This document shows, in pieces, positions 3,974-41,865 of a DNA stretch of 64,000 nt (the first letter of the stretch is position 1; each line of letters opens with the position of its first letter). The translations under genes and the position numbers were made by a program. The notes under the pieces were generated by a model, which saw only the letters and a program-made list of their open reading frames with translations, made no database searches and was not told the DNA's origin. The stretch spans positions 186,001 through 250,000 of the IMG/VR virus record IMGVR_UViG_3300020188_000808. One strand, 5' to 3'.

Positions 3974-4873
3974 TCAAGTTCCCCAGGCATTTCCGAATAA
4001 GCTGATGTGTAGTCTTGGAGTGAATCGCCATCCTTTTGCCATACACGCTTCAGCAACATCTTTAACGTTGAGGGAATATTCTTCACTGCGTCCACCCAAA
4101 GGCATAAGATATACTGGACATTGTACCCCGGCACTTCTGTAAGCCTCCACAGCTCTTTCAACTTCTTCAAAGTCGCCTTGAGTAGCGACAACAAACTTAA
4201 GATAGATGTCGCAATTAGTAATAGTACTATACTGACTAGCCACATCAGGCTTAATAGCAGTATCCCAAGGTTCTCCACTAACACTAAGTTTTGGGGAACA
4301 AGACCATGTAACTTTAATCCTGTCTTGATTGTTGAGATAGTCAAAGAAATCTTCGTGTAAAGTTTGCGTAGTGTTTGTTTCAAATGTAACATTTTTTAAG
4401 TCCTGCATACGTGGATGCTCGAATAATTCAATATATAATCGTTGCCATGCAAGTAATGGCTCGCCTCCGGTTAATATTAAATGGACATCTTGTCCATTGT
4501 CCTGTACCCACTTACCATTTGGAGTAAGTGAAAGTAAATGTTCAACAACAGCATCAACACCTGCTAGTTTATTAAAGTGTTTAAACTCAGGGTAGATACT
4601 TGCGTATGTATCACAACCTGTGTGTATAATAGGCAAGTCATTAAATTCTTTTGTAGTTTCGTGTACACCAGCATCAATCAATGCTTTAACTTCTGCATTG
4701 TGTTTTTTGCCGTCTTTGTGTTGTTCCCAACGATCACGTTTCTCATCTGTACCAAAGTTCATACAACGAAAATTACAACCAAATGTACGTAAGAACACAC
4801 TAGGTACTCCTACATATTGTCCTTCACCTTGTACACTATAAAATGCTTCTGAGTATCTAAGTTGAGCTGGCAT
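3974..4873 (-). CDS. queE: 7-carboxy-7-deazaguanine synthase (radical SAM)
   Basis: FYSVQGEG, VFLRTFGCNFRC, a later CDT cysteine, TGGEP, ETN, SPKL, C-terminal RLH. Confidence 0.92.
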   Translation of the reverse strand: MPAQLRYSEAFYSVQGEGQYVGVPSVFLRTFGCNFRCMNFGTDEKRDRWEQHKDGKKHNAEVKALIDAGVHETTKEFNDLPIIHTGCDTYASIYPEFKHFNKLAGVDAVVEHLLSLTPNGKWVQDNGQDVHLILTGGEPLLAWQRLYIELFEHPRMQDLKNVTFETNTTQTLHEDFFDYLNNQDRIKVTWSCSPKLSVSGEPWDTAIKPDVASQYSTITNCDIYLKFVVATQGDFEEVERAVEAYRSAGVQCPVYLMPLGGRSEEYSLNVKDVAEACMAKGWRFTPRLHISLFGNAWGT

Positions 4874-5061: not shown

Positions 5062-5249
5062 TATGACACCACCTTAAGCAAAGGCTCAGTAGTCGTACTA
5101 TCATTATAGTCATCACCAAAGAACCTACGTACCGTTGTTTCTTTGCGTAGCATACCGTCTTTAACACGATACGTAATAAACTCTTGCTTAACAACTCCTG
5201 ACATATCGCCCAGGCTGTCAACTGCTGATTTTAATGGTCCGTCACTCAT
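5061..5249 (-). CDS. hypothetical protein
   Basis: 62-aa ORF translationally coupled on both sides. Confidence 0.6.
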   Translation of the reverse strand: MSDGPLKSAVDSLGDMSGVVKQEFITYRVKDGMLRKETTVRRFFGDDYNDSTTTEPLLKVVS

Positions 5250-5929
5250 TTTGAAAACTCCTGTTGTAATTTAATATTGTCCATAAATTCTTTTTTAGTA
5301 CCCGCATCTTCATTAAAAGCACCTTTAAGCACAGTTGTCTGTGTTAAACTGCTAGTTGCCATAATGCCTCTATTCTCACAACACCCATGTGTTGCCTGAA
5401 TATAAACACCTACGTTCTTTGAACCAGTTGCTTTCATAATCTCACGTGCGATATCATTACAAAGTTCTTCTTGTAGTGTACCACGTCTAGCACACCATTG
5501 TGCAATACGTGTGTATTTGCTTAAACCAATTAGTGTTTCAGCGGCAATAATACCAATGTATGCAATACCTGTTACTGGTTGATGATGATGTGAACACACA
5601 CTTTTAAGTTCTGAACGTACAACTAACATACCTTGATAACCATCATCTACATGATTAGGAAATGCAGTTGCATTAGGCATAGGATCATAACGTCCTGCCA
5701 TTAGTTCATTAATATACATTTTAGCAAGACGTCTACCAGTGTCCATACTGTTAGGATCATTTGCTCTATCAATTAATAAACTATCTAATACTGATTCAAA
5801 CTTAGGTGTAAGTTCTTCAATCAGTTCTTCTTTGTCGCCCTTCTGTAGGACTAAACTAATATTATCACCCGCCCAGTAACGTATGCCTTGTTCTTCTAGG
5901 CGAGCTTTAATTTGTTCACTTTTACTCAT
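5246..5929 (-). CDS. folE: GTP cyclohydrolase I
   Basis: SVCSHHHQP, GLSKYTR, LQEEL, HGCCENRG motifs. Confidence 0.95.
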   Translation of the reverse strand: MSKSEQIKARLEEQGIRYWAGDNISLVLQKGDKEELIEELTPKFESVLDSLLIDRANDPNSMDTGRRLAKMYINELMAGRYDPMPNATAFPNHVDDGYQGMLVVRSELKSVCSHHHQPVTGIAYIGIIAAETLIGLSKYTRIAQWCARRGTLQEELCNDIAREIMKATGSKNVGVYIQATHGCCENRGIMATSSLTQTTVLKGAFNEDAGTKKEFMDNIKLQQEFSK

Positions 5930-9766: not shown

Positions 9767-10118
9767 CTGCTTCTTTTTTACCTTTGTAATCTTGCTTAAC
9801 TAAATCATACATAGTTTTAAAATTATGCCAAACTATTTTTAGTGCTGGATACTCTTTACACATTTCTGTTATTTCATCTTCGTCTAATGTATTTAGGCCA
9901 ACGTCAGAAAAAAGTGTACTATTAATATCAATACTAGTAATTCCGCCTACTGTTGCACCTGACTGAAATGAGTCATCAAATGAATATGTAACGTCACTCA
10001 TTGTGTTATCAAGGATAAGCCCACTATCTGATGCACTACCAATAGTAATTGTACTTGTACTGCACTGATCGTCAGTACCAATAGTAATTGAATAGTCATC
10101 TTTGTCTTTATCATCCAT
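9738..10118 (-). CDS. acidic protein ending in an SSB-like tail (EFDDDIPF)
   Basis: AAGGA SD before the ATG at 10118; C-terminus read directly. Confidence 0.7.
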   Translation of the reverse strand: MDDKDKDDYSITIGTDDQCSTSTITIGSASDSGLILDNTMSDVTYSFDDSFQSGATVGGITSIDINSTLFSDVGLNTLDEDEITEMCKEYPALKIVWHNFKTMYDLVKQDYKGKKEAGEFDDDIPF

Positions 10119-11157
10119 TACTAATTCCTTTATATAAAGCTCGACCATCAAAGAACTCTTTCTTTAATAGATCTGTTTGTTTTAATAGTGCAGGCAAATA
10201 AGATTCATAATTTTCTACATAGTCAACTAACTGTGCAACTATTTTATCTTTATTAGCTTTGTAGCTTTCAAAAGATTCAGTCCACGCACTAGGATATTTA
10301 AATTTATCAATAGCCATTTCACTATAGCTTAGTCTATCAGGCACCATAGGAAGTGCATTTACTAATGCACCTTCATACCAACTAATGCCAAGTGTTTCTT
10401 GTAGGTTAGCACTAAACACTACTTTTGCTTCACCTAGCAAGTTATGATATTCGTTTTTACTTAATGTTTGTTCTTGACATACTACAAATTCGTATTCAGG
10501 AAGTTGCTCCGCTAAGTCACGGAATATGTCTACTTGCTTCTCCGGTGCTACACGATGTGGGAACAAGACCAAGTCTCGCTTCTGCATACCTTTGTAACTG
10601 TCTAAACTGTTACGCAAATACTCCATAGGCCAACCAACTCTGTGATTCTTGTTTGGATCCATACGTAAACTTTTTGCAAATAGATCAATATGGAATTGTG
10701 TAGCAAAATAGTTATCATCATAACATTCATACATAGAACGTTCTGCATGTCTTACCCAAGGTTTGTCGCCTATTAGTCTACCCAAGAAGTCATGTGGATC
10801 ATAGCTACCAGCATGCCACATACCACCAATGCGAATGTCAACACCCAATAGTTCTGCCATGTAGCGTAGTTGTATAACTGTAGGGTTCCAGGCATCGGTA
10901 TAAAGAAAATAATCACCGTCCTTAATAGTTCCTGCACAGAACATTTCTCCTATTTGTTCTAGTTGTTTACTTTTGTAAACGTTAGTACCACCAAAGTTGA
11001 GAAAAGCCCCAGGCGTTGTAGCCTGAGGCGTTTCCCCTCCACTAATAATCTTTACGTCCATATTTGTAGCACGTTGAAGTTGCTTTGGAAGATATTCTTT
11101 CCATTGCTTAGTATAACGGGTATCTACTGCTTCAATGTCTACAATGTACGTTGTCAT
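10111..11157 (-). CDS. GT-B glycosyltransferase (GT4-like)
   Basis: MWHAG in the N-terminal domain; FPHRVAPEKQ and QETLGISWYEG (EX7E-like) in the C-terminal domain. Confidence 0.8.
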   Translation of the reverse strand: MTTYIVDIEAVDTRYTKQWKEYLPKQLQRATNMDVKIISGGETPQATTPGAFLNFGGTNVYKSKQLEQIGEMFCAGTIKDGDYFLYTDAWNPTVIQLRYMAELLGVDIRIGGMWHAGSYDPHDFLGRLIGDKPWVRHAERSMYECYDDNYFATQFHIDLFAKSLRMDPNKNHRVGWPMEYLRNSLDSYKGMQKRDLVLFPHRVAPEKQVDIFRDLAEQLPEYEFVVCQEQTLSKNEYHNLLGEAKVVFSANLQETLGISWYEGALVNALPMVPDRLSYSEMAIDKFKYPSAWTESFESYKANKDKIVAQLVDYVENYESYLPALLKQTDLLKKEFFDGRALYKGISNG

Positions 11158-12584: not shown

Positions 12585-12613
12585 ATTATAGCACTATAAT
12601 GACTTGTCGTCAA
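12585..12613 (-). promoter_or_regulatory. sigma70 promoter TTGACG-N17-TATAAT
   Basis: Read directly. Confidence 0.75.
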
Positions 12614-13199
12614 GTGCTTCTCCTCCTAAATTGCCATTAAATGCTATTGATATACGTGATGTATTGCTCGTATTATCTCCAACACTATGATTGATCCAAC
12701 CCGGAAAACATACAAGATCACCATCTTTTGGCATCACTGTGTATCTTGTTCCGTTAAAGGGAGTTGGAATTTTGGTTAGTTTATATGGTAATGCATAGTC
12801 CATTAGTCCATGCGGACTAGAAAGAACAAGATTACCACCTTCTGCGGGCGCCTTTACGTAGTATACAGCTGACATAATATGTCCTGGGTGCATATGCATG
12901 TCATTAGTATTAGACCTGCTTGTATTAGGCTTATTAACGTTAATCCAAGCCTGTGTTACTTCTATACGGCAGTTGTCAACAAGTCCTAATAGTTCTGCTT
13001 GTTTATCAAACAATGCTTGTACACGAGCTACAAGAGGTTGCAATATTACGTTAGTAAGATCAAGATGCATACTTTGCCAGTTGTCATTTGTACCTTCTGC
13101 ACTATACAGGCCATGACAAAATGCATACAACGTATCGTTGCTTAGTTCGTTAGCATGTTCATACAAGAAGGGCGTTGCAAAAAGCGATTCTGTATGCAT
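12594..13199 (-). CDS. putative 2OG-Fe(II) oxygenase (TIGR02466-like)
   Basis: HMHPG, SAVYYV, FPGWINHSV, RISIAFN. Confidence 0.85.
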   Translation of the reverse strand: MHTESLFATPFLYEHANELSNDTLYAFCHGLYSAEGTNDNWQSMHLDLTNVILQPLVARVQALFDKQAELLGLVDNCRIEVTQAWINVNKPNTSRSNTNDMHMHPGHIMSAVYYVKAPAEGGNLVLSSPHGLMDYALPYKLTKIPTPFNGTRYTVMPKDGDLVCFPGWINHSVGDNTSNTSRISIAFNGNLGGEALDDKSL

Positions 13200-13208
13200 T
13201 AATAACTC

Positions 13209-14741
13209 CTATAAATTCTCTTCTAAGTTATCTAACTTATCTTCTGATAGTTCAGGTTCGTCTACTGTTGCTGTGTTAGTATCTTCAACTTCAAACAAGT
13301 TTCCAAAGTGTGTACTTGCGTTTACAGTCTTTTTACCTGTTGCACCACGTGTTCCAATAATGGTCATAAAAAACTTTGAATTGTCTTCTATGATTTTGTT
13401 CGCTTTGTCTCTGTCGTCAGTTGCAAATATTGCCTCCACAACATCTCGGAAAAATACCCTGTCAAAACGCTCTTCCACAAGCATGTTCGGAACGACTCCA
13501 TTGTCGTATTGTCTATTCGCTTCTTGTACTGCATTAATATGACTCCATACATTATGACCCATTTGGATCGCATATGAAAAACTATCCCAAGATGTTTTTC
13601 CTTCTTTACCTATTTTATTTAAATCACCAGGTGCATAAATTGTAACATCTTTGGCTTTTAAATCTTGTGTAATAGGTGAATCTTTAAAACTAGTATGTTT
13701 ACCTTCTCTAACAAATGCCTGTCCAAACGGAGTAGTGTCTGTTGCTAGTGCTTTGTTGTCGATACTAGGAACCATTCTATACACCCATTTACTTCTATCC
13801 TGTGTTTCTAATTCACAATATATTTGACCGTTTGCTGTTGCTAAAAATGGAGAAGCACAATCAAATGTAATCATAAAGTTAGGGTTGTGATACTTACGCA
13901 CCGCACGTTGGATATCAGTTAATAGTGTAGCCCACTCCAATTTACTTGTACCTAAGAAGTGCATTACATCATGTAAGCCTGTTTGTAATAGTCCGTCAAA
14001 CCTTAATGCAACTAGACGTTTAAGAACCAAATGCACATCACACATGTTCTGTCCACCCATACTCCAACCATTAAAATGTGTATCAGGATACTTGGCTGGA
14101 TCACAATAGTCTTTCATCTGTTGATACCAATCTTCAGCATCAGCATGATTTTCACCTTGTAGTACGTTTAGGAATTTACAAGCACCACTTCTATTTTTCA
14201 TAAAGAAGTCATTGTTAATACGTGTAGCATTAACGGCATCTTGATAGTTGTCAATACCTGTTGCTTTAGCACCTTCAGGTGAACGTGCCACCCAGGCAGG
14301 GATATCAAGGATCATACCATAGTCCATGTAAGCATCCATCCATGCAAGAACTTGTGTACGTTTTTTCATTGCTTTAGGACAGTTAGGATTCTTCCAGTCG
14401 CCTTCCCAAACACCTTTACCAATTTGGAAACCACCTGAGTCACCAAGTAGCCAACTAGTAGTACGATCTCTGTTACGGATCATATCTTCTTTAGGTGAGT
14501 CCTTGTTGATATCAAGTTCGGCATGTCCTGCTGAATACAAACTCCAATGGTATTGAAACTGTCCGTCTTTACGGTTTAACCAATTAAGACTTTCAACACC
14601 GTTCTTAAAGTTTGCAGGAATACGATTGTATTCTACATATTCGCCTGCTCTTTGTTTACCAACAAACGTAGCATAGAAGCCACTTAGTGCTGGTAAGAAC
14701 GTTGCGTAATCGTTCTGTGCTTTTGTTAAGTCGGTATTCAA
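13209..14741 (-). CDS. dpdA: tRNA-guanine-transglycosylase-like DNA 7-deazaguanine transglycosylase (DpdA/DpdA2-like)
   Basis: TGT motifs in the correct order: DSGGFQ, LDIP, VLQG, MGG, HFLG, FDCAS; clustered with folE, queE and the QueD paralog. Confidence 0.8.
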   Translation of the reverse strand: MNTDLTKAQNDYATFLPALSGFYATFVGKQRAGEYVEYNRIPANFKNGVESLNWLNRKDGQFQYHWSLYSAGHAELDINKDSPKEDMIRNRDRTTSWLLGDSGGFQIGKGVWEGDWKNPNCPKAMKKRTQVLAWMDAYMDYGMILDIPAWVARSPEGAKATGIDNYQDAVNATRINNDFFMKNRSGACKFLNVLQGENHADAEDWYQQMKDYCDPAKYPDTHFNGWSMGGQNMCDVHLVLKRLVALRFDGLLQTGLHDVMHFLGTSKLEWATLLTDIQRAVRKYHNPNFMITFDCASPFLATANGQIYCELETQDRSKWVYRMVPSIDNKALATDTTPFGQAFVREGKHTSFKDSPITQDLKAKDVTIYAPGDLNKIGKEGKTSWDSFSYAIQMGHNVWSHINAVQEANRQYDNGVVPNMLVEERFDRVFFRDVVEAIFATDDRDKANKIIEDNSKFFMTIIGTRGATGKKTVNASTHFGNLFEVEDTNTATVDEPELSEDKLDNLEENL

Positions 14742-14753
14742 ATTATTCTCCTA

Positions 14754-14954
14754 TTATCCAAAGGCTTTAATTGCTAAAAGCGGAACAAGCCAAGGATAAA
14801 CTAAATGTTCTATTAGTTCGTATATTACTAATACTGTTAATAATATTGCCCATAGTTTACTTGTCTTTGCTTTGTTACTAACATATGTAAACACCTTTGA
14901 ATGTGCTTTTCCTATTTTGTCTATTAAGCCTGGCTTTTTATTTTTTTTCGTCAT
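14754..14954 (-). CDS. small membrane protein
   Basis: 66 aa; basic N-terminus, hydrophobic C-terminal half. Confidence 0.6.
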   Translation of the reverse strand: MTKKNKKPGLIDKIGKAHSKVFTYVSNKAKTSKLWAILLTVLVIYELIEHLVYPWLVPLLAIKAFG

Positions 14955-14960
14955 TTATCC

Positions 14961-15692
14961 TTACTTAGTTTGTGCTGGTAGAATATAGTCGTACTGACCT
15001 AAACCACTGTCAACACTTAATGCCATTGCACCTTGATCACTAATCTTCATAGTTACTTTACCATCAAGATTTAAAATAGCTTGTACTTGTGCTACAGGCC
15101 AACTCCAAGCATGTTTCAATTCACTGCCAACTCCGTGTTGGAATACAAATGATCCTGCGTGTTGTGAAGCGTCACCAAAAGTAAACACTAAGTTATCATT
15201 TTCAGTCTTAACTGTAAATGTAGTTTCTTCTGAATGTGCCGCACTTTGCAATTTCATTCTAGTAATTGAAGCCATTGTAGGCTCAATGGTTACGTCCCAA
15301 CTTGCACCTTTAAACTTAACAGTTTTAAGTTTCTCATCAATAATTGCTTTATTCATAAAGCGATAATCGTTTTCAAAGTCACCTGCTTCGTTTTCAAAGT
15401 GTAAGTGTGTTGGCAAAGTTTCGCCGTCTTTTTCTCTAGACTCTACAGTAATCTTTGCTTGTTTTTGATACTCAGGATTCTTTAAGTGTAGTGCTAACTT
15501 GTCTAAGTTAGGCATACCAAAGGTTCCTTTAAATTCGTTTACTGCCGCCTTTGTTGTAGCAGTTAAGATAACACTTCTATCTTCTGCCATTGATTCGATT
15601 GTCGTTGCGGCATCTTCACCAGTAACTTTTACTAAAGTTAAAAATCCTAGTGAATGTGTATGAGCAACAACGTCTTGTAAGATATCTTTCAT
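14961..15692 (-). CDS. sliding clamp (T4 gp45-like)
   Basis: 243 aa, alpha/beta repeat pattern, FGMPNLDKL segment, located near PolB. Confidence 0.7.
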   Translation of the reverse strand: MKDILQDVVAHTHSLGFLTLVKVTGEDAATTIESMAEDRSVILTATTKAAVNEFKGTFGMPNLDKLALHLKNPEYQKQAKITVESREKDGETLPTHLHFENEAGDFENDYRFMNKAIIDEKLKTVKFKGASWDVTIEPTMASITRMKLQSAAHSEETTFTVKTENDNLVFTFGDASQHAGSFVFQHGVGSELKHAWSWPVAQVQAILNLDGKVTMKISDQGAMALSVDSGLGQYDYILPAQTK

Positions 15693-15707
15693 TTTAACAT
15701 TTCTCCA

Positions 15708-16475
15708 TTAGTTATATACATTATATTTAGGTTTTTCTAAAAAGTCAAGCTCTTTCTTGTCTTTTAAGAATTGTATTAGCTCAATTGTTGTTTTCCAACC
15801 CAAGCCTTGTAACACTGATATGTCAGCAACATTATCAGCTCTTTCATTGGGAGTATCCATTTTCATTTGTGGATTCATTCCAAATTCTTTTAAAATACTT
15901 TTTAGTGATTGGCTTTTGCCAGTTCCGATATCAATAACTCCTCTTACATCTTCGTTTTTGATTAATGTAAGTATTGCACTTACAATATCGGCAACATGAA
16001 TAAAGTCTCTTTTATGATTAGTTACGTGTGGTACATCATTGCGTATAATTCGAGGTATTAACATGTTTGGCCTAAGTTCTGAGTTGTTACTGTATATAGT
16101 TGTAAATCTCATGCCTAGACTTGATTGTGGTGCAATGCGTTCAACTGTATGTTTAGTTAATGCATACGGATTTCTATTAGGTTCTTTTGCAGTACTTGAA
16201 CTAGCATACAGTATTCTAGTATTTTTAAAATGGTCAAATAATCTTTTAGTTGCTAGTACGTTATGTTGAAAATACAAATCAGGTTCTTCTAAACTTCTTA
16301 GTATTCCGCTTTCGCCTGCAAGATGAATTACTAGATCAACATCGAAGTCTAACGAACAGTCTAGTAAGTTATTACCGTCTTTTAAATCAATACCAATAAC
16401 ACGATGGTCTTTGGTTAGAGCAGTATACAACTCTGTTCCAACCATACCTTTATGTCCTGTTAGTAGTATCCTCAT
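15708..16475 (-). CDS. NAD-dependent epimerase/dehydratase (extended SDR)
   Basis: LTGHKGMVG Rossmann motif, HLAG, ASSS, YALTK (YxxxK), RDFIHV. Confidence 0.9.
   Translation of the reverse strand: MRILLTGHKGMVGTELYTALTKDHRVIGIDLKDGNNLLDCSLDFDVDLVIHLAGESGILRSLEEPDLYFQHNVLATKRLFDHFKNTRILYASSSTAKEPNRNPYALTKHTVERIAPQSSLGMRFTTIYSNNSELRPNMLIPRIIRNDVPHVTNHKRDFIHVADIVSAILTLIKNEDVRGVIDIGTGKSQSLKSILKEFGMNPQMKMDTPNERADNVADISVLQGLGWKTTIELIQFLKDKKELDFLEKPKYNVYN
15720..15748 (-). promoter_or_regulatory. sigma70 promoter TTGACT-N17-TATAAT upstream of clamp and dpdA
   Basis: Read directly; inside the epimerase 3' end. Confidence 0.75.
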
Positions 16476-17017
16476 CGAGATTTAACTCCAAAGTGTTTAT
16501 AGGTTGATTGTACACACTTAGCTTGATAGTAACAGTCTGCTAATGCATTATGTAATTCTTCTTGTATTGCTTTACGAGGATCTGTAGGCATCATAGCAAA
16601 CAATGTTCTACTGTCTCTAATCTGCCAAAAGTTCCATGGACACGGCTTACCAACGCCTTTGTATAAGTTTTGTAAAATAGCATAATCAAACAATGGACCT
16701 TGACACCAAAGTTGATCTACTCCTACACAAAATTTATTAATTGCTTTTGTAAGTTGCTCCATGTTCACACGATCTTTGTGTTCACCAAATGCTTCTTCTC
16801 TAATCTTAGGATCTTGTTTACCCCACCATTCAAGTGTATTGTCATCTATTGTACGATGATACTTTTCACTTTGTTCTTCAATGTCGCAACGTAGATACAA
16901 TCCTGAGTGCGGATCTTCATCTGTATACGGGTCGAATTTAATAGCACCGAGTGTTATGATAACACTATCTGGCTCAACGCCAAGTGTTTCTAAATCTATC
17001 ATTCCATGTACAGCCAT
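16472..17017 (-). CDS. DEDDh 3'-5' exonuclease (DexA / RNase AS-like)
   Basis: MIDLETLG, QGPLFD, HNALADC. Confidence 0.88.
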   Translation of the reverse strand: MAVHGMIDLETLGVEPDSVIITLGAIKFDPYTDEDPHSGLYLRCDIEEQSEKYHRTIDDNTLEWWGKQDPKIREEAFGEHKDRVNMEQLTKAINKFCVGVDQLWCQGPLFDYAILQNLYKGVGKPCPWNFWQIRDSRTLFAMMPTDPRKAIQEELHNALADCYYQAKCVQSTYKHFGVKSR

Positions 17018-17018
17018 A

Positions 17019-17144
17019 TTAAATTACCTTCACTAAAATTACTATTTGAAGTATTAGCACAGCAATTGGAACAACAGTTCTAATTAGTTCCATAGTGTGA
17101 TTATACTCGTCAAGTTTTCTTTCAAGTTTATTTCTTCTTGCCAT
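17019..17144 (-). CDS. small membrane peptide
   Basis: MARRNKLERK...hydrophobic C-terminus; start after AGAAAGG just downstream of the polB stop. Confidence 0.5.
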   Translation of the reverse strand: MARRNKLERKLDEYNHTMELIRTVVPIAVLILQIVILVKVI

Positions 17145-17154
17145 AATCGCCTTT

Positions 17155-19824
17155 CTATTCTCCGAAATCAAACAAACTATTAAATGTATTGTTCTGTAAT
17201 GTGCTTGAAATATCATAGTCTAGCACACCGATCAAATTACCTAGTTTGTTGTCAATAATTGTTGATTCCATTGCATCATCATCAAACGGAAGTTCTTTAA
17301 ACCAATCTGGAATACGTAGTTCGTCTGTTGGATATGCAACACTTGTGTAGCCTAGTGGGTTCTGTTTTAGTTTACAAACAATAACTTTCATACCGTCTAC
17401 AATCTCTTGCGAGTATTTGTCACCGTTCATACGCTTTAGTGTGTTCCAGTTAATACTTGCACGAACATGTCCGGGCATAGTTGCTTTGCCTTGCTTTGCT
17501 TCTTTACGTTGATACTCGCCAATTTTGTTTGCACGTTTAGGTGAACCTTTTTCAAAACCAGGACGTAGTTTAAATGCAGTACGGAAGTCTGTAATCTTTG
17601 CAAGTATTTCAGCTTCTGTCTTATCTGTAAGTACCATAAGCAATAGTTCACTTAAAAACTCTTGCATAAACACAGGTGTATCTGATCGTTTAAGATCAAG
17701 ACCCATTGCTTTTACTTTACCTAGTTTACCGTTGACGTCCATGCGTTCGCCTTCGTTATCATAAATTAAAGCCGCATAACGTTTCTTAGTAATAAACAAA
17801 CCTGACTCAGCAACAATTTCTCTACCTGCCGCAATAACATCTGATCTGCTCTTTGGACAATGAAATGCTTCTTGCATAAACTTTGGAAATGTTTCATTCG
17901 CCGCTTCACATACTTGATCATATAATGTAATAACACTATCTTTTGTCCAAGGAATTTTTCCAGCATCAATATCTGCTTTTAGTACAGGGTGGGCACTAAA
18001 GTAAACAGAATCAGTATCACCATAGATAATACTATCACCTACATGATCATATGTGCCTGTAATAACTTTATTAACTTCTGCACTCATATGTTTTGCGATA
18101 GCTCTACCTGTTAGTGTTGTTGATTGACCAATCCGCGGATCAAAGAATCTACAACCAGGATTAAGAATTGCACCATACAAACTGTTCAAGTTAATCTTCT
18201 TAACCAACTGTCGTTTATCCCAAAACTCAACTTCAATTCTGTTTCCAGCATCAATAGCTTTGCCTTTTTGTTTTTGTAAATCTTTACGTTCACTATACCA
18301 ACGTTTAAGAAGTCCTGGAATAACACCGTCAAATTCATTAGTTAAGATAGTTCCGTTAGCAGTTAGCATCCATGGCTTGTGTGAATCAAATATTAGTTTG
18401 TATATCTCAGCACCACTAAGAATTTCACTTTCACCGTTTTCAAAGTCAACAGTAATACTAATGTCTTTCTTCTTCTCCATAACTGCTTCGTATTCAATAG
18501 TACCAAAGCGGCCTTCCCAAGCACCTGCAAATGACTTCTTCTGAAGTGTCATTGCATCTTCAACCATTGCATCAGTTAGCTCAGGACGTAATTGTCCTAT
18601 AACTGTTGCAGGATCCATATTTAATGCTCTAATAACAGACGGATATAGTGAATTCAAATCCATTGAACCAATCCACTTGTGTACACCTTTTTTAGGAAAT
18701 GCTACATAAGCACCTGCCGCAGGATCACTGCCAGGCTCACGTTTTACTCTGTTAGGAACTTGCAAGCCTCTGTGATGTGCTTCGTTGATAATTGCTTGTT
18801 CTGTAACTGCAACTGCACCCATAGTGGTCTGTAGTAACACCGTGTTACTATGTGCAAGTTCGTTACTAAGATCAATAAACTTTAGTTTTTTGTCCAGCTT
18901 GTCCAGTAGTGCAACGTCTTGTCTGTTGTACTCAATGAACGTTCTGAAGTCATTGTTATAAAGTTGATCGAGCGTACCTTCGTACACAGTTTTGTTTTCG
19001 CCGATCTCAAGTTCGCCAATAGCGTCGAGTCGATATGTGTGTCTTTCTTCATATGTGTATTTACGATATAATTCCAAACTATCTAAATGCACTCTGCCTA
19101 TTAGGTCATAGGTTTCAGCTTTACGTCCGTACTTTTCATATTCACGTTTCTTAGGAAGTTGTTTCCATAAACAAAAACGTCTTGTATCATCTTTACTTAA
19201 AACTCTTTTTACACGATTTACAGTATATGGAATATCATAACCTTCACTGTTCCAACCTGTAAGTATATCACTGTCTTGTATAATATCAAGAAACGCTTCT
19301 AACATGTCGCCTTCTTTTTCATACAAGTATGTGTTTGGAAAATCTTTTACTTCTTCTTTTGCTTGTTCCATTGATAAGCCTTTAGGAGGCATAGCAAATG
19401 TAACTAGACTATCTAACCATTGTAAGTGTACAGTAATAGCAGTAATAGGCATAAACGGATCACTAGGATCAGCAAAGCCACGTTCTGGATCAAAGTCTGT
19501 CTCAATATCAAAAAAGCAAACATTCAACTTAGGTGAATCTACATTTAAATAGTTTTCACTCAAACATTGGAAGATTGGATTAATATCACTTTCAAACAAT
19601 TCTTTGTTTGCGTTAATGGCTAGTTCTTTACGAAACTGTTTTGTGTTTTTAGCAACAATTCTGCTTAACGGATCGCCGTAAATACTTTTGTACTTACCAC
19701 GTTGATCTTTATAATAAAATGTGTATTTGATTGGGTATTCTGTGTAAGAACGCTTACCATCTTTTCGTTCGACTACTCTGATCACATCCTGATCACGATC
19801 AAACTGTGCGTCTACATAACTCAT
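17155..19824 (-). CDS. polB: family B DNA polymerase with proofreading domain (gp43-like)
   Basis: DIETD, NSEGYD, YNRQD exonuclease motifs; DLNSLYPS, KINLNSLYG, YGDTDS polymerase motifs. Confidence 0.97.
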   Translation of the reverse strand: MSYVDAQFDRDQDVIRVVERKDGKRSYTEYPIKYTFYYKDQRGKYKSIYGDPLSRIVAKNTKQFRKELAINANKELFESDINPIFQCLSENYLNVDSPKLNVCFFDIETDFDPERGFADPSDPFMPITAITVHLQWLDSLVTFAMPPKGLSMEQAKEEVKDFPNTYLYEKEGDMLEAFLDIIQDSDILTGWNSEGYDIPYTVNRVKRVLSKDDTRRFCLWKQLPKKREYEKYGRKAETYDLIGRVHLDSLELYRKYTYEERHTYRLDAIGELEIGENKTVYEGTLDQLYNNDFRTFIEYNRQDVALLDKLDKKLKFIDLSNELAHSNTVLLQTTMGAVAVTEQAIINEAHHRGLQVPNRVKREPGSDPAAGAYVAFPKKGVHKWIGSMDLNSLYPSVIRALNMDPATVIGQLRPELTDAMVEDAMTLQKKSFAGAWEGRFGTIEYEAVMEKKKDISITVDFENGESEILSGAEIYKLIFDSHKPWMLTANGTILTNEFDGVIPGLLKRWYSERKDLQKQKGKAIDAGNRIEVEFWDKRQLVKKINLNSLYGAILNPGCRFFDPRIGQSTTLTGRAIAKHMSAEVNKVITGTYDHVGDSIIYGDTDSVYFSAHPVLKADIDAGKIPWTKDSVITLYDQVCEAANETFPKFMQEAFHCPKSRSDVIAAGREIVAESGLFITKKRYAALIYDNEGERMDVNGKLGKVKAMGLDLKRSDTPVFMQEFLSELLLMVLTDKTEAEILAKITDFRTAFKLRPGFEKGSPKRANKIGEYQRKEAKQGKATMPGHVRASINWNTLKRMNGDKYSQEIVDGMKVIVCKLKQNPLGYTSVAYPTDELRIPDWFKELPFDDDAMESTIIDNKLGNLIGVLDYDISSTLQNNTFNSLFDFGE

Positions 19825-19840
19825 ATTTTAACTCCTTGTA

Positions 19841-19889
19841 TGTCACTTGGGGCTGACAAAAACCAATAAGGTCGCTTATGGCCGACTTT
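19841..19889 (-). promoter_or_regulatory. tandem hairpins 5' of the polB ribosome-binding site (candidate translational operator)
   Basis: UGUCA-GCCCCAAG-UGACA 3 nt before AAGGAG, plus GUCG-GCCAUAAG-CGAC upstream. Confidence 0.5.
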
Positions 19890-20190
19890 TACCTTCATTC
19901 TTAAAATATTCATTCGCCTCTCTTGCCTTGTCATCTATCCAAATATCATAGTGTGGCTTTCTAAAACTTAGTGTTGTGTATAGTACACCCCACTCCGCAA
20001 ACTGGTCTTTAGTAAGCTCACTCCAATCTTTGCCTGTGCTACCGCCTCTAGCAGTCCAATAATGTATTTCATTGCCTTCATTATACAACTTATTAAAGTG
20101 TTGTATACGTTGAACATCTGGTTTACTAAATTCGTACTCACTGTTATTATTATAACAGATAGTTCCGTCTATGTCAACCATATATTTCAT
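19876..20190 (-). CDS. small HAD-family phosphatase
   Basis: VDIDGT, WTARG, KPHYDIWIDDKA; start at 20190 by ATGA coupling. Confidence 0.85.
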   Translation of the reverse strand: MKYMVDIDGTICYNNNSEYEFSKPDVQRIQHFNKLYNEGNEIHYWTARGGSTGKDWSELTKDQFAEWGVLYTTLSFRKPHYDIWIDDKAREANEYFKNEGKSRP

Positions 20191-20495
20191 ATTACGAACA
20201 ACTGTATTAATGCCCAAAGGTTCATTGCTGAGAACCAAGAACAAAGTATAATTACAAATGCCGCTTGTCTAATAACTGCACTAACAATGCCCAAAATACT
20301 TCCAACCAAATATAATGGCACAAATATTGTTGTTGCAGGGTCTAATATAGTAAAGCTCAATATTGCACTTGCTGAGATTAAGAACAATGCCTCAATCATT
20401 TCGCAATAGAATGCAACAGGACTTAGCCTATAACTTGTTTTAAAGAAATTGGTTACTCTATTCAAACTACTTGTCCTTGCCAACTGTAACAACAA
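20187..20495 (-). CDS. small multi-pass membrane protein
   Basis: Three hydrophobic segments; the true start is probably downstream (TTG near 20465). Confidence 0.55.
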   Translation of the reverse strand: MLLQLARTSSLNRVTNFFKTSYRLSPVAFYCEMIEALFLISASAILSFTILDPATTIFVPLYLVGSILGIVSAVIRQAAFVIILCSWFSAMNLWALIQLFVI

Positions 20496-20786: not shown

Positions 20787-21326
20787 TTATTCAGCTTGTG
20801 TACGATGAATTGTTAAATTACCTGCTATTACTATTCGCTCTTTGTCGTTCTTCTGTGGGGGTACTTCGTGTGTTACCCAACCTGGGAATACTGCTATAAG
20901 TCCGGGATTTGGAAATATAGCATTACCACTTGTTGGAAATACTAAAGGTGCATCATCTGGAGTTGCATCAACATAGTATACAAAACTCCAAATAGCAGGA
21001 TGATGTGCATGTGGTTTACAGCTATCGCCTTTGGAATATACTGCACCCCAACAATCTGTTACTTCATACTTACCACCAACTAAATGTTCAAGACCATTTT
21101 GTACAACATCAATAGCAAAGTTAATAATCTTTTTAAAGTCAGGATCTCTAAACATTGTCCATTCTGTCATATTTGCTTGAACATTTGTTTTTCTAAATTG
21201 GCAATCCCCTCTAGCTCTAATTTTTTCAGCTAGTATTGGATTGAGTGTCTCGGCATCTTCATATACGTGAGTATAGATGTCAGCAGATTCTTTAAACTCT
21301 AATTTTTGCACGTTTGGTATGAACAT
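20787..21326 (-). CDS. putative 2OG-Fe(II) oxygenase
   Basis: PHAHHP, SFVYYV, FPGWVTHEV, RIVIAGN. Confidence 0.82.
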   Translation of the reverse strand: MFIPNVQKLEFKESADIYTHVYEDAETLNPILAEKIRARGDCQFRKTNVQANMTEWTMFRDPDFKKIINFAIDVVQNGLEHLVGGKYEVTDCWGAVYSKGDSCKPHAHHPAIWSFVYYVDATPDDAPLVFPTSGNAIFPNPGLIAVFPGWVTHEVPPQKNDKERIVIAGNLTIHRTQAE

Positions 21327-21331
21327 GCAAT

Positions 21332-21339
21332 TATTTATA
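21332..21339 (-). promoter_or_regulatory. T4 late promoter consensus TATAAATA
   Basis: Exact match 6 nt upstream of the ATG at 21326. Confidence 0.6.
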
Positions 21340-21359
21340 TAGGGGTGTTTAATGTATTG

Positions 21360-40708: not shown

Positions 40709-40954
40709 TTACCCCATCCAGTTCCATACACCTCTAATTGCTAATAGCAAATACATCAATTCCATTAATGCTCTAGGTATATCTTTATCTTTAATTCCCA
40801 TCCAAATCCAGATACTACAACTTGCAAGAGCAACACCCCAACCTATCCATTGTATTTTTGGATCACCACCACTTAATATAAATGCACTAACCATTGCTAG
40901 TATAAATCCTAGCCATCGCCAGCCGTCAATTTTGTGGTAGTAGCGTATTTTCAT
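40709..40954 (-). CDS. small membrane protein
   Basis: 81 aa with three hydrophobic segments. Confidence 0.65.
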   Translation of the reverse strand: MKIRYYHKIDGWRWLGFILAMVSAFILSGGDPKIQWIGWGVALASCSIWIWMGIKDKDIPRALMELMYLLLAIRGVWNWMG

Positions 40955-41865
40955 ACTTTACCAAGTTTAATTAATGTTGCGGCTAAATTAATTTCCGGAT
41001 CAACTACTAATGTGTGATCTACTAGACCTTGTTTAATAATCATAATAGCTTTATCTTGTTGATCAGCATCACCGAATAAATCAATATTGTCATAAAGCCA
41101 ACGATAAATCTCTTCCATCTCTTCAGCTCTAGCACTTGCACAAACAAGTTTACGTGCTTCTGTAATTTTACCTGCTTTAAATAATTGTACCATATCAAGT
41201 TTCCAATCAGCTTCTGTTTTATCAGCTTCGTTGGGTTTAATTAGTACACCGTCTTGTGAATTCATTTGCACCATATTAATGCATTTACGTAAATCTGGAT
41301 ATGTTGCTTTTACATATGTATCAAGTGTGTCTAAGTCTGGTTGTACACCTTCTGCAATTAAAATCTCTGCAACTCTAGCAGTAAACTCTGTTTGATCTAC
41401 TTTTGCAATATGAAATCCTTGACATCTACTGTGCAATGCCGGAATAATTCTATTAGGATAGTTACACGTTAAAATAAATCTGCTTGTAGTATGATATTCC
41501 TCCATAACACCACGTAGTGCGGCTTGTGCGTTAGGCGACAAATAATCAGCCTCATCTAGTAGCACAACCTTAAAGTCACCAAATGGAATCATCTGTACAA
41601 AGTTTACAATCTTATTTCTAACTTCATCTACAGAGTTTGTTCGACTTGCGTTAATTTCTAGTATGTCTAGATCATTTAATTCTAGTTCGTTAAACAGTAG
41701 TTTAGCAAGTGTTGTCTTTCCAATACCTGCGTTACCACTAAACAACAAATGAGGAATAGTTTTGTCTTTAATCCAAGTTTGTATTTGTTTCTTTTGATGT
41801 TCATCTCTGAACACATAACCGTCTACTGTTTTAGGACGATATTTTTCTACCCAAAGTTCTTTCAT
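40951..41865 (-). CDS. clamp loader AAA+ subunit (RFC small / T4 gp44-like)
   Basis: WVEKYRP, GNAGIGKTT, INAS, LLDEAD, SRC, DLRKCIN. Confidence 0.93.
   Translation of the reverse strand: MKELWVEKYRPKTVDGYVFRDEHQKKQIQTWIKDKTIPHLLFSGNAGIGKTTLAKLLFNELELNDLDILEINASRTNSVDEVRNKIVNFVQMIPFGDFKVVLLDEADYLSPNAQAALRGVMEEYHTTSRFILTCNYPNRIIPALHSRCQGFHIAKVDQTEFTARVAEILIAEGVQPDLDTLDTYVKATYPDLRKCINMVQMNSQDGVLIKPNEADKTEADWKLDMVQLFKAGKITEARKLVCASARAEEMEEIYRWLYDNIDLFGDADQQDKAIMIIKQGLVDHTLVVDPEINLAATLIKLGKV

What the first reader, a model, noticed from the sequence alone, without database searches (positions are those of the whole stretch)
13287..17190. DpdA and PolB share a C-terminal F-x-x-L-F-[DE]-hydrophobic motif, and dpdA follows the clamp gene: possible replisome-tethered base exchange
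Seen: PolB ends NTFNSLFDFGE (17164..17190); DpdA has THFGNLFEVED near its C-terminus (13287..13313), followed only by an acidic tail. dpdA lies two genes downstream of the gp45-like clamp under a promoter at 15720..15748. Established: T4/RB69 gp43 binds the clamp through a hydrophobic C-terminal peptide (SLDFLF-like). Inference: this DpdA docks on the sliding clamp and modifies nascent DNA during replication, a coupling I do not know to be reported.
Basis: partly seen in the sequence, partly recalled or inferred. Interest (0 to 1): 0.75.

Follow-up and report, generated by a model that had tools for sequence, protein, structure and literature searches.

The report
Clamp-docking tail on phage DpdA enzyme
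A marine jumbo phage's DNA guanine-swapping enzyme (DpdA-like) carries the same short C-terminal docking peptide as the phage's own DNA polymerase, and this pairing recurs lineage by lineage in many phages, which suggests that 7-deazaguanine DNA modification is physically tied to the sliding clamp of the replication machinery.

Summary
On the minus strand, PolB (17155-19824) ends NTFNSLFDFGE. A 510-aa TGT-fold DpdA-like protein (13209-14741) carries FGNLFEV (13287-13307) in a disordered tail, two genes after a PCNA-fold clamp (14961-15692).

Within this genome alone the motif is not significant. Comparative data carry the case:
- 101 of 120 close homologues end 2-4 residues after the LF.
- 30 of 98 diverse homologues have [LM]F in the last 8 residues, against 6 of 249 proteins in the phage's own proteome (p = 4e-13).
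- In 8 jumbo-phage lineages and 4 of 6 T4-like phages with DpdA2-type enzymes, the DpdA tail copies its own polymerase's tail. Examples: Vibrio 2.275.O NNTDLFDW / NNNDLFGW, and ACP17 SLDDLFE / TLDELFE, the latter matching T4's solved clamp peptide SLDFLF. Pairing permutations give p = 0.011 and 0.024.
- DpdA1 enzymes beside beta-like clamp genes end Q[DE]LF.
- Homologues found without a clamp or PolB nearby lack the tail.

A complex prediction placed residues 475-487 at the clamp's interdomain loop and C-terminus (ipSAE 0.47, controls 0.00; the tool's verdict was "weak support").

Binding and its effect on modification are untested. I found no paper linking DpdA to a clamp. Interest is high.

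The parts
17155..19824 (-). Family-B replicative DNA polymerase, 889 aa
   Evidence: Pfam DNA_pol_B and DNA_pol_B_exo1; phrog_262 E 1.6e-195. 42-50% identical to the polymerases of jumbo phages Phosso, Atu_ph07, the 121Q/Rak2 group and Vibrio 2.275.O.
17158..17190 (-). PolB C-terminal tail NTFNSLFDFGE, the presumed clamp-interacting peptide
   Evidence: Conserved as NTF[NS]xLF[DE]F in about 70 related IMG/VR contigs. Positionally equivalent to the T4 gp43 peptide 892-SLDFLF-897, which sits in the gp45 pocket (PMC12746103).
15720..15748 (-). Sigma-70-like promoter consensus match (TTGACT-17-TATAAT) upstream of the clamp gene
   Evidence: 11 of 12 matches, second best in 13000-20200. This is a consensus match only; function was not shown.
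14961..15692 (-). PCNA-fold sliding clamp, 243 aa
   Evidence: No Pfam hit; phrog_12062 (unknown function). AlphaFold model pLDDT 70; the top 50 Foldseek PDB hits are all PCNA, E about 2e-8, probability 1.0. Homologues in PAC2 and Phosso are annotated PCNA and clamp. It always sits between PolB and the dpdA-like gene.
14754..14954 (-). 66-aa ORF between the clamp and dpdA-like genes, with a hydrophobic C-terminal half; function unknown
   Evidence: Small ORFs occupy the same position in PA5oct, Vibrio 2.275.O, CAjan and Iggy. Homology between them was not tested.
13209..14741 (-). DpdA-like DNA guanine transglycosylase of the TGT superfamily, 510 aa
   Evidence: AlphaFold model pLDDT 92. Foldseek top hits are all Z. 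mobilis tRNA-guanine transglycosylase, E 3e-7, probability 1.0. Catalytic motifs are invariant in 67 homologues. A profile of the family hits the ACP17 DpdA at E 8e-8. 7-deazaguanine synthesis genes lie nearby here and in relatives.
14424..14441 (-). DSGGFQ active-site motif (D101-Q106)
   Evidence: D, S and the second G are invariant, the first G and Q nearly so, in alignment A2, whose numbering is one lower. Its correspondence to the TGT Asp102 motif rests on established TGT knowledge.
13860..13862 (-). D294 in ITFDC, the candidate catalytic nucleophile (equivalent of TGT Asp280 in the FDC motif)
   Evidence: Invariant in A2, listed there as D293. The equivalence is inferred from the motif, not from a residue-level superposition.
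13269..13343 (-). Disordered linker (about residues 467-491) that carries the docking motif
   Evidence: pLDDT is below 50 for model residues 466-480 and 485-490, which are protein residues +1. Sequence and length vary among homologues.
13287..13307 (-). FGNLFEV (F479-V485), the proposed clamp-interacting peptide of the DpdA-like enzyme
   Evidence: 101 of 120 close homologues end within 4 residues after the LF. The predicted interface with the clamp is residues 475-476, 478-479 and 481-487.
13212..13247 (-). Second conserved terminal element SEDKLDNLEENL (predicted helix), present only in long forms; function unknown
   Evidence: [DE]xKL[DE]xLE-like end in 17 of 19 long forms and in PA5oct. 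Unique in this proteome. Not in the confident predicted interface.
40951..41865 (-). Clamp-loader-like AAA+ protein, 304 aa
   Evidence: PF13177 DNA_pol3_delta2 E 6e-12 and PF00004 AAA E 3e-17 on the same ORF.
5246..5929 (-). GTP cyclohydrolase I (FolE), first step of 7-deazaguanine synthesis
   Evidence: Pfam E 8e-38; phrog_2197.
3974..4873 (-). QueE-like radical SAM enzyme (7-carboxy-7-deazaguanine synthase)
   Evidence: phrog_2076 E 2.6e-50.
10111..11157 (-). GT-B glycosyltransferase-like protein that recurs just downstream of dpdA-like genes
   Evidence: The Atlas clusters it falls in are named glycosyl transferase family 1. A homologue lies just downstream of dpdA-like in L087 by tblastn (E 6e-70). 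In PA5oct, EST35_0317 shares a C-terminal peptide by eye.

Best explanation
The 510-aa protein is a DpdA-type DNA guanine transglycosylase. Its catalytic TIM-barrel domain ends near residue 460. It is followed by a flexible tail carrying a short hydrophobic clamp-interacting peptide (F-x-x-L-F-E-V) of the same type as the C-terminal peptide of the phage's own family-B polymerase.

Proposed mechanism:
- The peptide docks in the hydrophobic pocket under the interdomain loop of one protomer of the phage's trimeric PCNA-like clamp. Clamps are loaded only at primer-template junctions of replicating phage DNA, by the phage clamp loader.
- While the polymerase occupies another protomer, or after it has left a clamp behind on a finished lagging-strand fragment, the tethered enzyme rides on newly made duplex. 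There it exchanges guanine for a 7-deazaguanine base made by the phage FolE/QueD/QueE pathway.
- The likely benefits are a high local enzyme concentration on nascent DNA, selectivity for phage DNA over host DNA, and modification before host nucleases can act.

What is shown: the sequence features, the two folds, conservation of the tail, lineage-specific co-variation with the polymerase tail, and gene linkage. What is inferred: physical binding to the clamp, the timing at or behind the fork, and the effect on modification level.
For: Identity of the parts:
- TGT fold with invariant DSGGFQ and FDC aspartates.
- PCNA fold for the neighbouring 243-aa protein and a clamp-loader-like AAA+ in the window.
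- FolE and QueE in the window and QueD elsewhere in the genome. Relatives carry QueE, QueC, QueF, YhhQ and FolE beside the homologue.
- PA5oct, which encodes a 36%-identical homologue, has DNA resistant to five restriction enzymes; the authors infer a modified G in GA and/or GG motifs (PMC12191111).

The tail behaves as a docking motif:
- It lies in a low-confidence linker.
- 101 of 120 close homologues stop 2-4 residues after the LF, while the others add a variable acidic extension.
- 30 of 98 homologues, each from a different 50%-identity cluster, have [LM]F in the last 8 residues, against 6 of 249 proteins in this phage's proteome (Fisher p = 4e-13).

Co-variation with the polymerase tail (PolB / DpdA):
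- Window NSLFDFGE / GNLFEVED; PA5oct DSLFGW / NSLFDV; Vibrio 2.275.O NNTDLFDW / NNNDLFGW; Phosso NDLFTF / VEGLF; L087 DDLFDF / NNLFDFS; L088 MKLFNY / KSLFEF; L090 KTNDFFSFE / NTNEKWF; L097 STFFEF / LSLFEF. Exact permutation of the pairings gives p = 0.011.
- T4-like phages with DpdA2-type enzymes: ACP17 SLDDLFE / TLDELFE; Moby SLEDLFGW / SLDDLFG; X1 SLESLFG / SLEELFG; BUCT-ZZ01 TLDDFFS / SLDSFFD. Permutation gives p = 0.024. These match the T4 gp43 peptide SLDFLF seen in the gp45 pocket (PMC12746103).
- DpdA1 enzymes of 9g, CAjan, Iggy and BcepGomr sit next to a beta-like clamp gene and end QDLFDE, MELF, QELF and QGLFV.

Negative set: P0251, P0316, P0346 and P0300 lack the tail and have no PolB or clamp within the contig or 10 kb. 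Mycobacteriophage Bipper DpdA also lacks the tail, and none of the five genes flanking it in the 3.1 kb examined is a clamp.

Linkage: the PolB-clamp-dpdA order holds in all IMG/VR loci long enough to show it.

Docking prediction: ipSAE 0.54, 0.47 and 0.46 against 0.00 for all three controls. The interface is DpdA residues 475-487 against clamp residues 38-39, 42, 123-130 (interdomain loop), 220-222 and 237-241 (C-terminal strand). At least 15 of these 19 clamp positions are invariant or nearly invariant among the 32 aligned clamp homologues.
Against: - There is no experimental binding or mutant data.
- The complex predictor's own verdict is 'weak support'; partner pLDDT was 45; the peptide-versus-trimer job is unlike the tool's calibration set; and clamp-peptide complexes are abundant in solved structures, so the model may be scoring from memory.
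- In this genome alone the motif is within chance expectation.
- About half of the more distant homologues have no [LM]F in the last 40 residues.
- KVP40 and nt-1 DpdA2 have no polymerase-like tail although they encode a gp45-type replisome, and the pf16 tail is only partly similar.
- Phage DpdA1 modifies plasmid DNA in E. coli without any phage clamp (PMC6884629), so tethering is not required for catalysis in general.
- The negative-context contigs are fragments, so absence of a clamp is not proven.
- The permutation tests use ad hoc scoring and small numbers (8 and 6 lineages).
- The published view is that insertion is 'post-replicative' (PMC10516641). This is compatible with clamp coupling but does not require it.
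Confidence: 0.72

Rival explanations
1. The shared tail is a docking peptide, but for a replisome hub other than the clamp (for example the clamp loader, helicase/primase or a single-strand-binding protein). DpdA would still be replisome-associated, but not clamp-borne.
For: Co-variation shows only that PolB and DpdA share a partner, not which one. In Phosso the dpdA-like gene sits next to primase and helicase rather than the clamp. The complex prediction is only weak support.
Against: In T4 the polymerase peptide of this type sits in the gp45 clamp pocket in a solved structure (PMC12746103), and the T4-like DpdA2 tails are near-copies of it. The tail flavour tracks the clamp type: Q[DE]LF with beta-like clamps, SLDxLF in T4-like phages and FxxLF with the PCNA-like clamp. 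The prediction places the motif at the interdomain loop and C-terminal strand of the clamp.
Confidence: 0.1
2. The tail does bind the clamp, but its role is regulatory or competitive rather than to deliver the enzyme to nascent DNA. Examples would be displacing or exchanging polymerase, or marking clamps.
For: The tail mimics the polymerase tail closely enough to compete for the same pocket.
Against: The catalytic residues are invariant across the family, and precursor-synthesis genes are co-located, so the protein is an active enzyme whose substrate is duplex DNA, the very molecule the clamp encircles. A trimeric clamp offers spare pockets: two T4 polymerases engage one clamp at once (PMC12746103).
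Confidence: 0.06
3. The resemblance is coincidental or reflects a structural or folding role of a hydrophobic C-terminus, with no docking function.
For: The single-genome statistics are unremarkable. LF dipeptides are common. Several unrelated proteins of this phage also end with LF-like tails.
Against: There is a 13-fold enrichment at the extreme C-terminus across diverse homologues (p = 4e-13). The motif is kept while linker length and sequence vary, and it lies in a disordered segment. It matches the own-polymerase tail lineage by lineage, including LF-to-FF and LF-to-WF switches on both proteins.
Confidence: 0.05
4. The enzyme is a tRNA-guanine transglycosylase acting on phage or host tRNA rather than on DNA, and the tail is unrelated to DNA modification.
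For: The nearest solved folds are tRNA enzymes. No DNA chemistry data exist for this uncultured phage.
Against: There is no Pfam TGT match. The gene is embedded between the clamp gene and the replication module in every lineage. A profile of the family links to DpdA2-type DNA enzymes. PA5oct DNA shows G-dependent restriction resistance. A polymerase-like clamp tail makes little sense for a tRNA enzyme.
Confidence: 0.03

Closest known systems
Phage DpdA DNA transglycosylases (DpdA1 of 9g/CAjan, DpdA2 of nt-1, DpdA3 of phiST/CP220; Hutinet et al. 2019 and 2023)
   Same: TGT-superfamily fold, conserved DSGGFQ and FDC aspartates, and gene neighbourhood with FolE/QueD/QueE. A profile of the window family detects the ACP17 DpdA (E 8e-8), which in turn is 34-36% identical to the nt-1 DpdA2 prototype.
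   Different: Not detected by Pfam TGT, PHROGs or NCBIfam. tblastn finds only the PA5oct group, Phosso and Vibrio 2.275.O among 50,697 phage records. The protein is larger (510 aa). It could not be placed in DpdA1-4 with these tools. No published description of DpdA that I could find mentions a clamp-binding tail.
T4/RB69 gp43 clamp-interacting peptide (T4 892-SLDFLF-897) and the other gp45 clients
   Same: A short hydrophobic peptide at the extreme C-terminus of a flexible tail that binds the pocket between the two clamp domains. The DpdA2-type tails of ACP17, Moby, X1 and BUCT-ZZ01 are near-copies.
   Different: The client here is a base-exchange DNA-modifying enzyme, not a polymerase, ligase or transcription factor. 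In the window phage the clamp is PCNA-fold with no detectable gp45 sequence similarity, and the motif flavour is FxxLF[DE]-hydrophobic.
Eukaryotic and archaeal PCNA clients that modify or repair DNA behind the fork (DNMT1, UNG2; recalled from general knowledge, not tested here)
   Same: The logic is the same: a DNA-modifying enzyme recruited to newly replicated DNA through a clamp-binding peptide.
   Different: The peptide type differs (the canonical PIP box is Qxx[LIM]xx[FY][FY]), as do the chemistry (methylation or uracil excision versus base exchange with a 7-deazaguanine) and the biological purpose (anti-restriction protection of a viral genome).
Bacterial beta-clamp-binding motif QL[SD]LF (recalled from general knowledge)
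   Same: DpdA1 enzymes encoded next to beta-like phage clamps end in QDLF, QELF, MELF or QGLF.
   Different: There is one residue fewer between Q and LF than in the consensus. Binding is untested, and these tails were not compared with their own polymerases' clamp motifs, which are not at the C-terminus.

Membership tests
TGT/DpdA superfamily (guanine transglycosylase) | TGT-type TIM-barrel fold | tested here: met
   AlphaFold model pLDDT 92, pTM 0.90. The top 50 Foldseek PDB hits are all Z. mobilis TGT, E from 3e-7, probability 1.0, TM about 0.5 by target.
TGT/DpdA superfamily (guanine transglycosylase) | Catalytic aspartates (DSGGFQ Asp, and the nucleophile Asp in the FDC motif) | tested here: met
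   D101 and D294 are invariant in 67 homologues down to 26% identity (sequence). Equivalence to TGT Asp102 and Asp280 is by motif, not by residue-level superposition.
TGT/DpdA superfamily (guanine transglycosylase) | Match to the curated family model (Pfam PF01702 TGT) | tested here: not met
   No Pfam, PHROG or NCBIfam hit. The same is true of accepted DpdA enzymes: PF01702 also failed on 9g and CAjan, so this feature is not discriminating.
TGT/DpdA superfamily (guanine transglycosylase) | Co-occurrence with 7-deazaguanine precursor synthesis genes | tested here: met
   FolE and QueE are in the window and QueD is in the genome. QueC was not found in this 75%-complete record. Que genes lie beside the homologues in PA5oct, Vibrio 2.275.O, L087 and L090.
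TGT/DpdA superfamily (guanine transglycosylase) | 7-deazaguanine demonstrated in the phage's DNA | not testable with these tools
   The phage is an uncultured metagenomic virus. The only indirect support is the G-dependent restriction resistance of PA5oct DNA (PMC12191111).
Sliding-clamp client carrying a clamp-interacting peptide | Short hydrophobic motif at or near a terminus in a disordered segment | tested here: met
   F479-V485 lies in the low-pLDDT linker. Most homologues end right after it.
Sliding-clamp client carrying a clamp-interacting peptide | Motif conserved across orthologues while the flanks vary, and enriched over background | tested here: met
   30 of 98 against 6 of 249, p = 4e-13.
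Sliding-clamp client carrying a clamp-interacting peptide | Resembles and co-varies with the cognate polymerase's clamp peptide | tested here: met
   Eight jumbo-phage lineages, p = 0.011. Six T4-like lineages, p = 0.024, with four near-identical pairs.
Sliding-clamp client carrying a clamp-interacting peptide | Docks in the hydrophobic pocket under the interdomain connecting loop | tested here: inconclusive
   ipSAE 0.47 (median) against 0.00 for the controls, with the interface on the interdomain loop and C-terminal strand. The tool's own verdict is 'weak support'.
Sliding-clamp client carrying a clamp-interacting peptide | Measured physical binding to the clamp | not testable with these tools
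   Needs a biochemical experiment.
PCNA/gp45-type sliding clamp (the 243-aa protein) | Two-domain DNA-clamp fold | tested here: met
   Model pLDDT 70. The top 50 Foldseek PDB hits are all PCNA, E about 2e-8.
PCNA/gp45-type sliding clamp (the 243-aa protein) | Cognate clamp loader and replicative polymerase encoded by the same genome | tested here: met
   PolB lies about 1.5 kb upstream of it, with two genes between. A clamp-loader-like AAA+ is at 40951-41865.
PCNA/gp45-type sliding clamp (the 243-aa protein) | Closed trimeric ring | not tested
   Three copies were supplied to the complex job, but ring geometry was not reported.

The most novel reading that the evidence does not exclude
Clamp tethering may be a general, repeatedly evolved property of phage 7-deazaguanine transglycosylases. 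On this reading each DpdA subfamily has acquired the tail that fits its own phage's clamp type: Q[DE]LF with beta-like clamps in the Queuovirinae, SLDxLF in T4-like phages with a gp45-type replisome, and FxxLF with the PCNA-like clamps of jumbo phages. Presence, absence or strength of that tail would then be a main determinant of how completely a genome is modified. nt-1 lacks the tail and has only 0.02-0.11% of its G modified. The same idea could explain why some DpdA enzymes failed in E. coli, where the cognate clamp is absent. '7-deazaguanine insertion' would then be a replisome-coupled rather than a free post-replicative reaction.
Probability: 0.45. Interest if true: 0.88.

Novelty: new variant of a known kind. 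Interest (0 to 1): 0.8.

Why it matters
DpdA enzymes are described as post-replicative base exchangers, and reported modification levels range from under 0.1% to 100% of guanines (PMC10516641). I found no mechanism proposed for that range in the papers I searched. A clamp-docking tail offers a concrete, testable mechanism for speed, completeness and phage-versus-host DNA selectivity.

It also suggests why heterologous expression of some DpdA enzymes failed: the cognate clamp and loader were missing. And it adds a new class of client, a base-exchange enzyme, to sliding clamps.

The test is simple in culturable relatives (PA5oct, ACP17, Moby, CAjan, 9g): tail mutants plus LC-MS of virion DNA. 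It could also help engineer fully modified DNA in vitro or in vivo by co-supplying clamp and loader.

Tried and rejected
- Megablast of the 6.6-kb region against the phage collection found no match.
- Pfam, PHROGs, NCBIfam and PDB sequence searches gave nothing useful for the DpdA-like protein or the clamp. Identity had to come from folds.
- A single-genome motif count is not significant on its own, so I did not rely on it.
- I tried to extend the test to DpdA3 of Campylobacter phage CP220, which has 100% modification. Neither the window-family HMM nor a DpdA2 HMM found a DpdA there. Its gp43 ends ETLEEW, and no other ORF has a similar tail, so DpdA3 remains untested.
- I could not obtain accessions for Cellulophaga phiST or the Flavobacterium phage, and the 2023 paper's supplements are not held.
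- PF01702 failed to find DpdA1 in 9g and CAjan. I used the record annotation and tblastn instead.
- I first assumed 9g and CAjan lack a phage clamp and could serve as negatives. That was wrong: they encode a beta-like clamp right next to dpdA.
- I did not examine the idea that the acidic extension is part of the clamp interface beyond noting that it is absent from the confident contacts.
- Numbering slip: alignments A1 and A2 and both models start at residue 2, because I trimmed the start codon instead of the stop codon on the minus strand. Their residue numbers are therefore one lower than the true ones. All coordinates in this report are corrected.

Full report
**Setting**

The window is bases 186001-250000 of a 267,783-bp IMG/VR virus record, 36% G+C and about 75% complete. 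Its polymerase, clamp and DpdA-like protein are most similar to those of jumbo myoviruses: the Pseudomonas PA5oct group, Sinorhizobium Phosso, Agrobacterium Atu_ph07, the 121Q/Rak2 group and Vibrio phage 2.275.O. Identities are 28-50%. Thousands of close homologues occur in marine metagenomes.

**Checking the observation**

All genes concerned are on the minus strand. In order they are:
- PolB, 17155-19824, 889 aa, ending NTFNSLFDFGE.
- A 65-aa ORF.
- An Rv2179c-like exonuclease, 16472-17017.
- An NAD-dependent epimerase, 15708-16475.
- A 243-aa protein, 14961-15692.
- A 66-aa ORF, 14754-14954.
- A 510-aa protein, 13209-14741, with THFGNLFEVED at residues 477-487 followed by an acidic tail.

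A TTGACT-17-TATAAT match (11 of 12) lies at 15748-15720, just before the 243-aa gene. The three genes that follow are separated by 6 and 12 nt with no terminator-like site.

Taken alone, the motif is not statistically remarkable. [FYW]xx[LIM]F[DE] occurs 11 times in about 87,000 residues of this proteome, with about 1.1 expected in C-terminal tails, although PolB and the 510-aa protein are the only two ORFs that carry it in their last 45 residues.

**What the proteins are**

Neither the "DpdA" nor the "clamp" gives any Pfam, NCBIfam or PDB-sequence hit. PHROGs gives only an unknown-function family for the clamp.

An AlphaFold model of the 510-aa protein, built on 67 diverse homologues, has pLDDT 92. 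Its best PDB matches are all tRNA-guanine transglycosylase (E 3e-7, probability 1.0). The DSGGFQ aspartate (D101) and the aspartate of an FDC motif (D294) are invariant down to 26% identity. A profile of the family detects the DpdA of Acidovorax phage ACP17 (E 8e-8), which is itself 34-36% identical to the prototype DpdA2 of Vibrio phage nt-1.

FolE and a QueE-like enzyme are in the window, and QueD is elsewhere in the genome. QueC was not found. In PA5oct, Vibrio 2.275.O and two metagenomic relatives, the homologue sits beside QueE, QueC, QueF, YhhQ or FolE. A preprint reports that PA5oct DNA resists five restriction enzymes, and its authors infer a modified G in GA and/or GG motifs (PMC12191111). 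I therefore accept "DpdA-like DNA guanine transglycosylase", of a subfamily I could not assign to DpdA1-4.

The 243-aa protein models less well (pLDDT 70), but its top 50 PDB matches are all PCNA (E about 2e-8). Relatives are annotated PCNA or clamp, and a clamp-loader-like AAA+ lies at 40951-41865. It is a PCNA-fold clamp, not a recognisable gp45.

A numbering note: alignments A1 and A2 and both models begin at residue 2, so their numbers are one lower than the true ones. I give true numbers throughout.

**The tail behaves as a docking motif**

The globular domain ends near residue 460. Residues 467-491, which contain the motif, are low-confidence, and a short terminal helix covers residues 500-509.

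Among 120 close homologues (79-88% identical), 101 terminate 2-4 residues after the LF (typically ...Q[FY]xNLFEEV). The other 19 add a variable acidic stretch ending in a second conserved element, [DE]xKL[DE]xLE. Among 98 near-full-length homologues, each representing a different 50%-identity cluster, 30 have [LM]F within the last 8 residues. The figure for this phage's own proteome is 6 of 249 (Fisher p = 4e-13). The surrounding linker is otherwise unalignable. This is the signature of a short linear motif.

**Co-variation with the polymerase**

In about 70 related IMG/VR contigs the order PolB-clamp-dpdA is invariant. There PolB ends NTF[NS]xLF[DE]F and the DpdA-like protein carries its LF tail.

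Across deeper lineages the two tails change together:

| Lineage | PolB tail | DpdA-like tail |
|---|---|---|
| PA5oct | HFDSLFGW (C-terminus) | SFNSLFDV (acidic tail follows) |
| Vibrio 2.275.O | NNTDLFDW | NNNDLFGW |
| Phosso | FNDLFTF | VEGLF |
| L087 | LDDLFDF | NNLFDFS |
| L088 | MKLFNY | KSLFEF |
| L090 | KTNDFFSFE | NTNEKWF |
| L097 | STFFEF | LSLFEF |

An exact permutation of the eight pairings gives p = 0.011.

The pattern extends to T4-like phages with DpdA2-type enzymes:

| Phage | gp43 tail | DpdA tail |
|---|---|---|
| ACP17 | SLDDLFE | TLDELFE |
| Moby | SLEDLFGW | SLDDLFG |
| Xanthomonas X1 | SLESLFG | SLEELFG |
| Synechococcus BUCT-ZZ01 | TLDDFFS | SLDSFFD |

Permutation of the six T4-like pairings gives p = 0.024. 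These tails match the T4 gp43 clamp-interacting peptide 892-SLDFLF-897, which is seen in the gp45 pocket in a solved structure (PMC12746103).

There are exceptions. The pf16 tail (TLDLMCA) is only partly similar. KVP40 and nt-1 have no such tail, and nt-1 has only 0.02-0.11% of its G modified (PMC6884629). That fits the model, but it is a single data point.

In the DpdA1 phages 9g, CAjan, Iggy and BcepGomr, dpdA lies directly beside a beta-like clamp gene and the polymerase. Their enzymes end QDLFDE, MELF, QELF and QGLFV.

Four homologues without the tail (P0251, P0316, P0346, P0300) lie on contigs with no PolB or clamp within reach. Mycobacteriophage Bipper DpdA also lacks it, and none of the five genes flanking it in the 3.1 kb examined is a clamp. 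These contigs are fragments, so this negative set is suggestive only.

**Docking prediction**

I folded three clamp copies with the PolB tail (855-889) and the DpdA tail (461-510). The DpdA tail scored ipSAE 0.54, 0.47 and 0.46, against 0.00 for all three controls. The tool rates this "weak support".

The confident contacts are DpdA residues 475-476, 478-479 and 481-487, which is exactly the motif. On the clamp they are residues 38-39, 42, 123-130 (interdomain loop), 220-222 and 237-241 (C-terminal strand). That is where clamp clients bind. At least 15 of these 19 clamp positions are invariant or nearly invariant among the 32 aligned clamp homologues. The acidic extension is not in the confident interface.

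**Mechanism proposed**

The DpdA-like enzyme is tethered by its tail to a free pocket of the trimeric clamp on replicating phage DNA. From there it exchanges G for a 7-deazaguanine base on nascent duplex. This gives a high local concentration and selectivity for phage DNA.

The sequence features, folds, conservation, co-variation and linkage are shown. Binding, timing and the effect on modification are inferred. Heterologous DpdA1 activity in E. coli (PMC6884629) shows that tethering is not needed for catalysis as such. The reported failure of ACP17 dpdA in E. coli (PMC10516641) is compatible with a need for the cognate clamp, but it has many other possible causes.

**Novelty**

Full-text searches found no paper connecting DpdA or 7-deazaguanine insertion with a sliding clamp. 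The field describes the insertion as post-replicative and notes large differences in efficiency between subfamilies. Clamp clients and DpdA are both known kinds. Their combination, and the matching of tail type to clamp type, is a new variant with direct experimental tests in culturable phages.

Noticed in passing
window 13212-13247 (minus): The long forms of the DpdA-like protein end in a second conserved element, [DE]xKL[DE]xLE (here SEDKLDNLEENL, a predicted helix), after a variable acidic linker. It is present in 17 of 19 long forms and in PA5oct, absent from 101 of 120 close homologues, and unique in this proteome. Its partner or role is unknown.
   Followed up: partly
window 10111-11157 (minus); L087:12316-13392; L001:8617-9678: A 348-aa GT-B glycosyltransferase-like protein recurs just downstream of dpdA-like genes: by tblastn in L087, and by a shared C-terminal peptide seen by eye in PA5oct. 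The structural neighbours of the nearest Atlas cluster include tRNA-queuosine mannosyltransferase. Sugar-nucleotide genes accompany it (an NAD epimerase here at 15708-16475; PMM and mannose-1-phosphate isomerase/transferase-like genes in L087). The deazaguanine in these phages' DNA might be further glycosylated.
   Followed up: partly
window 9738-10151 (minus); L133:9945-11948 (phage 9g helicase gp11): A 137-aa protein ends EFDDDIPF, the same kind of tip as the bacterial SSB C-terminal tail. The phage 9g helicase ends DFDDDIPF. This may be another shared docking peptide in phage replisomes.
   Followed up: no
whole genome G000: FolE, QueD and a QueE-like enzyme are present, but no QueC was found in this 75%-complete record. 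This is the same gene set reported for phiST and the Campylobacter phages, whose pathways stop at CDG. The inserted base may therefore be CDG-derived rather than preQ0.
   Followed up: partly
G000:C1:165435-166556, 20890-21660, 30533-31210, 15446-16429 (L098-L100, L102): Other proteins of this phage end in LF-like tails: a radical SAM/SPASM protein (KELFE), a 2OG-Fe(II) oxygenase (EKLFKFVD), a GT8 glycosyltransferase (DNLFQMMDR) and the primase (KKWFG). Whether any of them is a clamp client was not tested.
   Followed up: partly
L133:2006-3960 (9g); L135:3495-7580 (CAjan); L136 (Iggy); L137 (BcepGomr): In DpdA1 phages, dpdA is directly followed by a beta-like 'processivity factor' gene and the DNA polymerase. 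The 9g and CAjan polymerase C-termini have no LF tail. Their N-termini begin ...AIGFFW[EQ]DLPP, which may be where their clamp motif lies.
   Followed up: partly
L088:4955-9154; L090:3822-7543; L001:605-5831: The PolB genes of several relatives are interrupted: intein-containing or split in L088 and L090, and split by a Hef-like homing endonuclease gene in PA5oct. The window's PolB is intact.
   Followed up: no
window 12594-13199, 8692-9327 and 20787-21326 (all minus); 9320-9766 (minus): There is a cluster of 2OG-Fe(II) oxygenase-like genes (Pfam/PHROG hits for the first two; the third judged by eye only) and a cysteine-dioxygenase-like gene around the dpdA-like gene. Their substrates are unknown, and they could take part in further base modification.
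   Followed up: no
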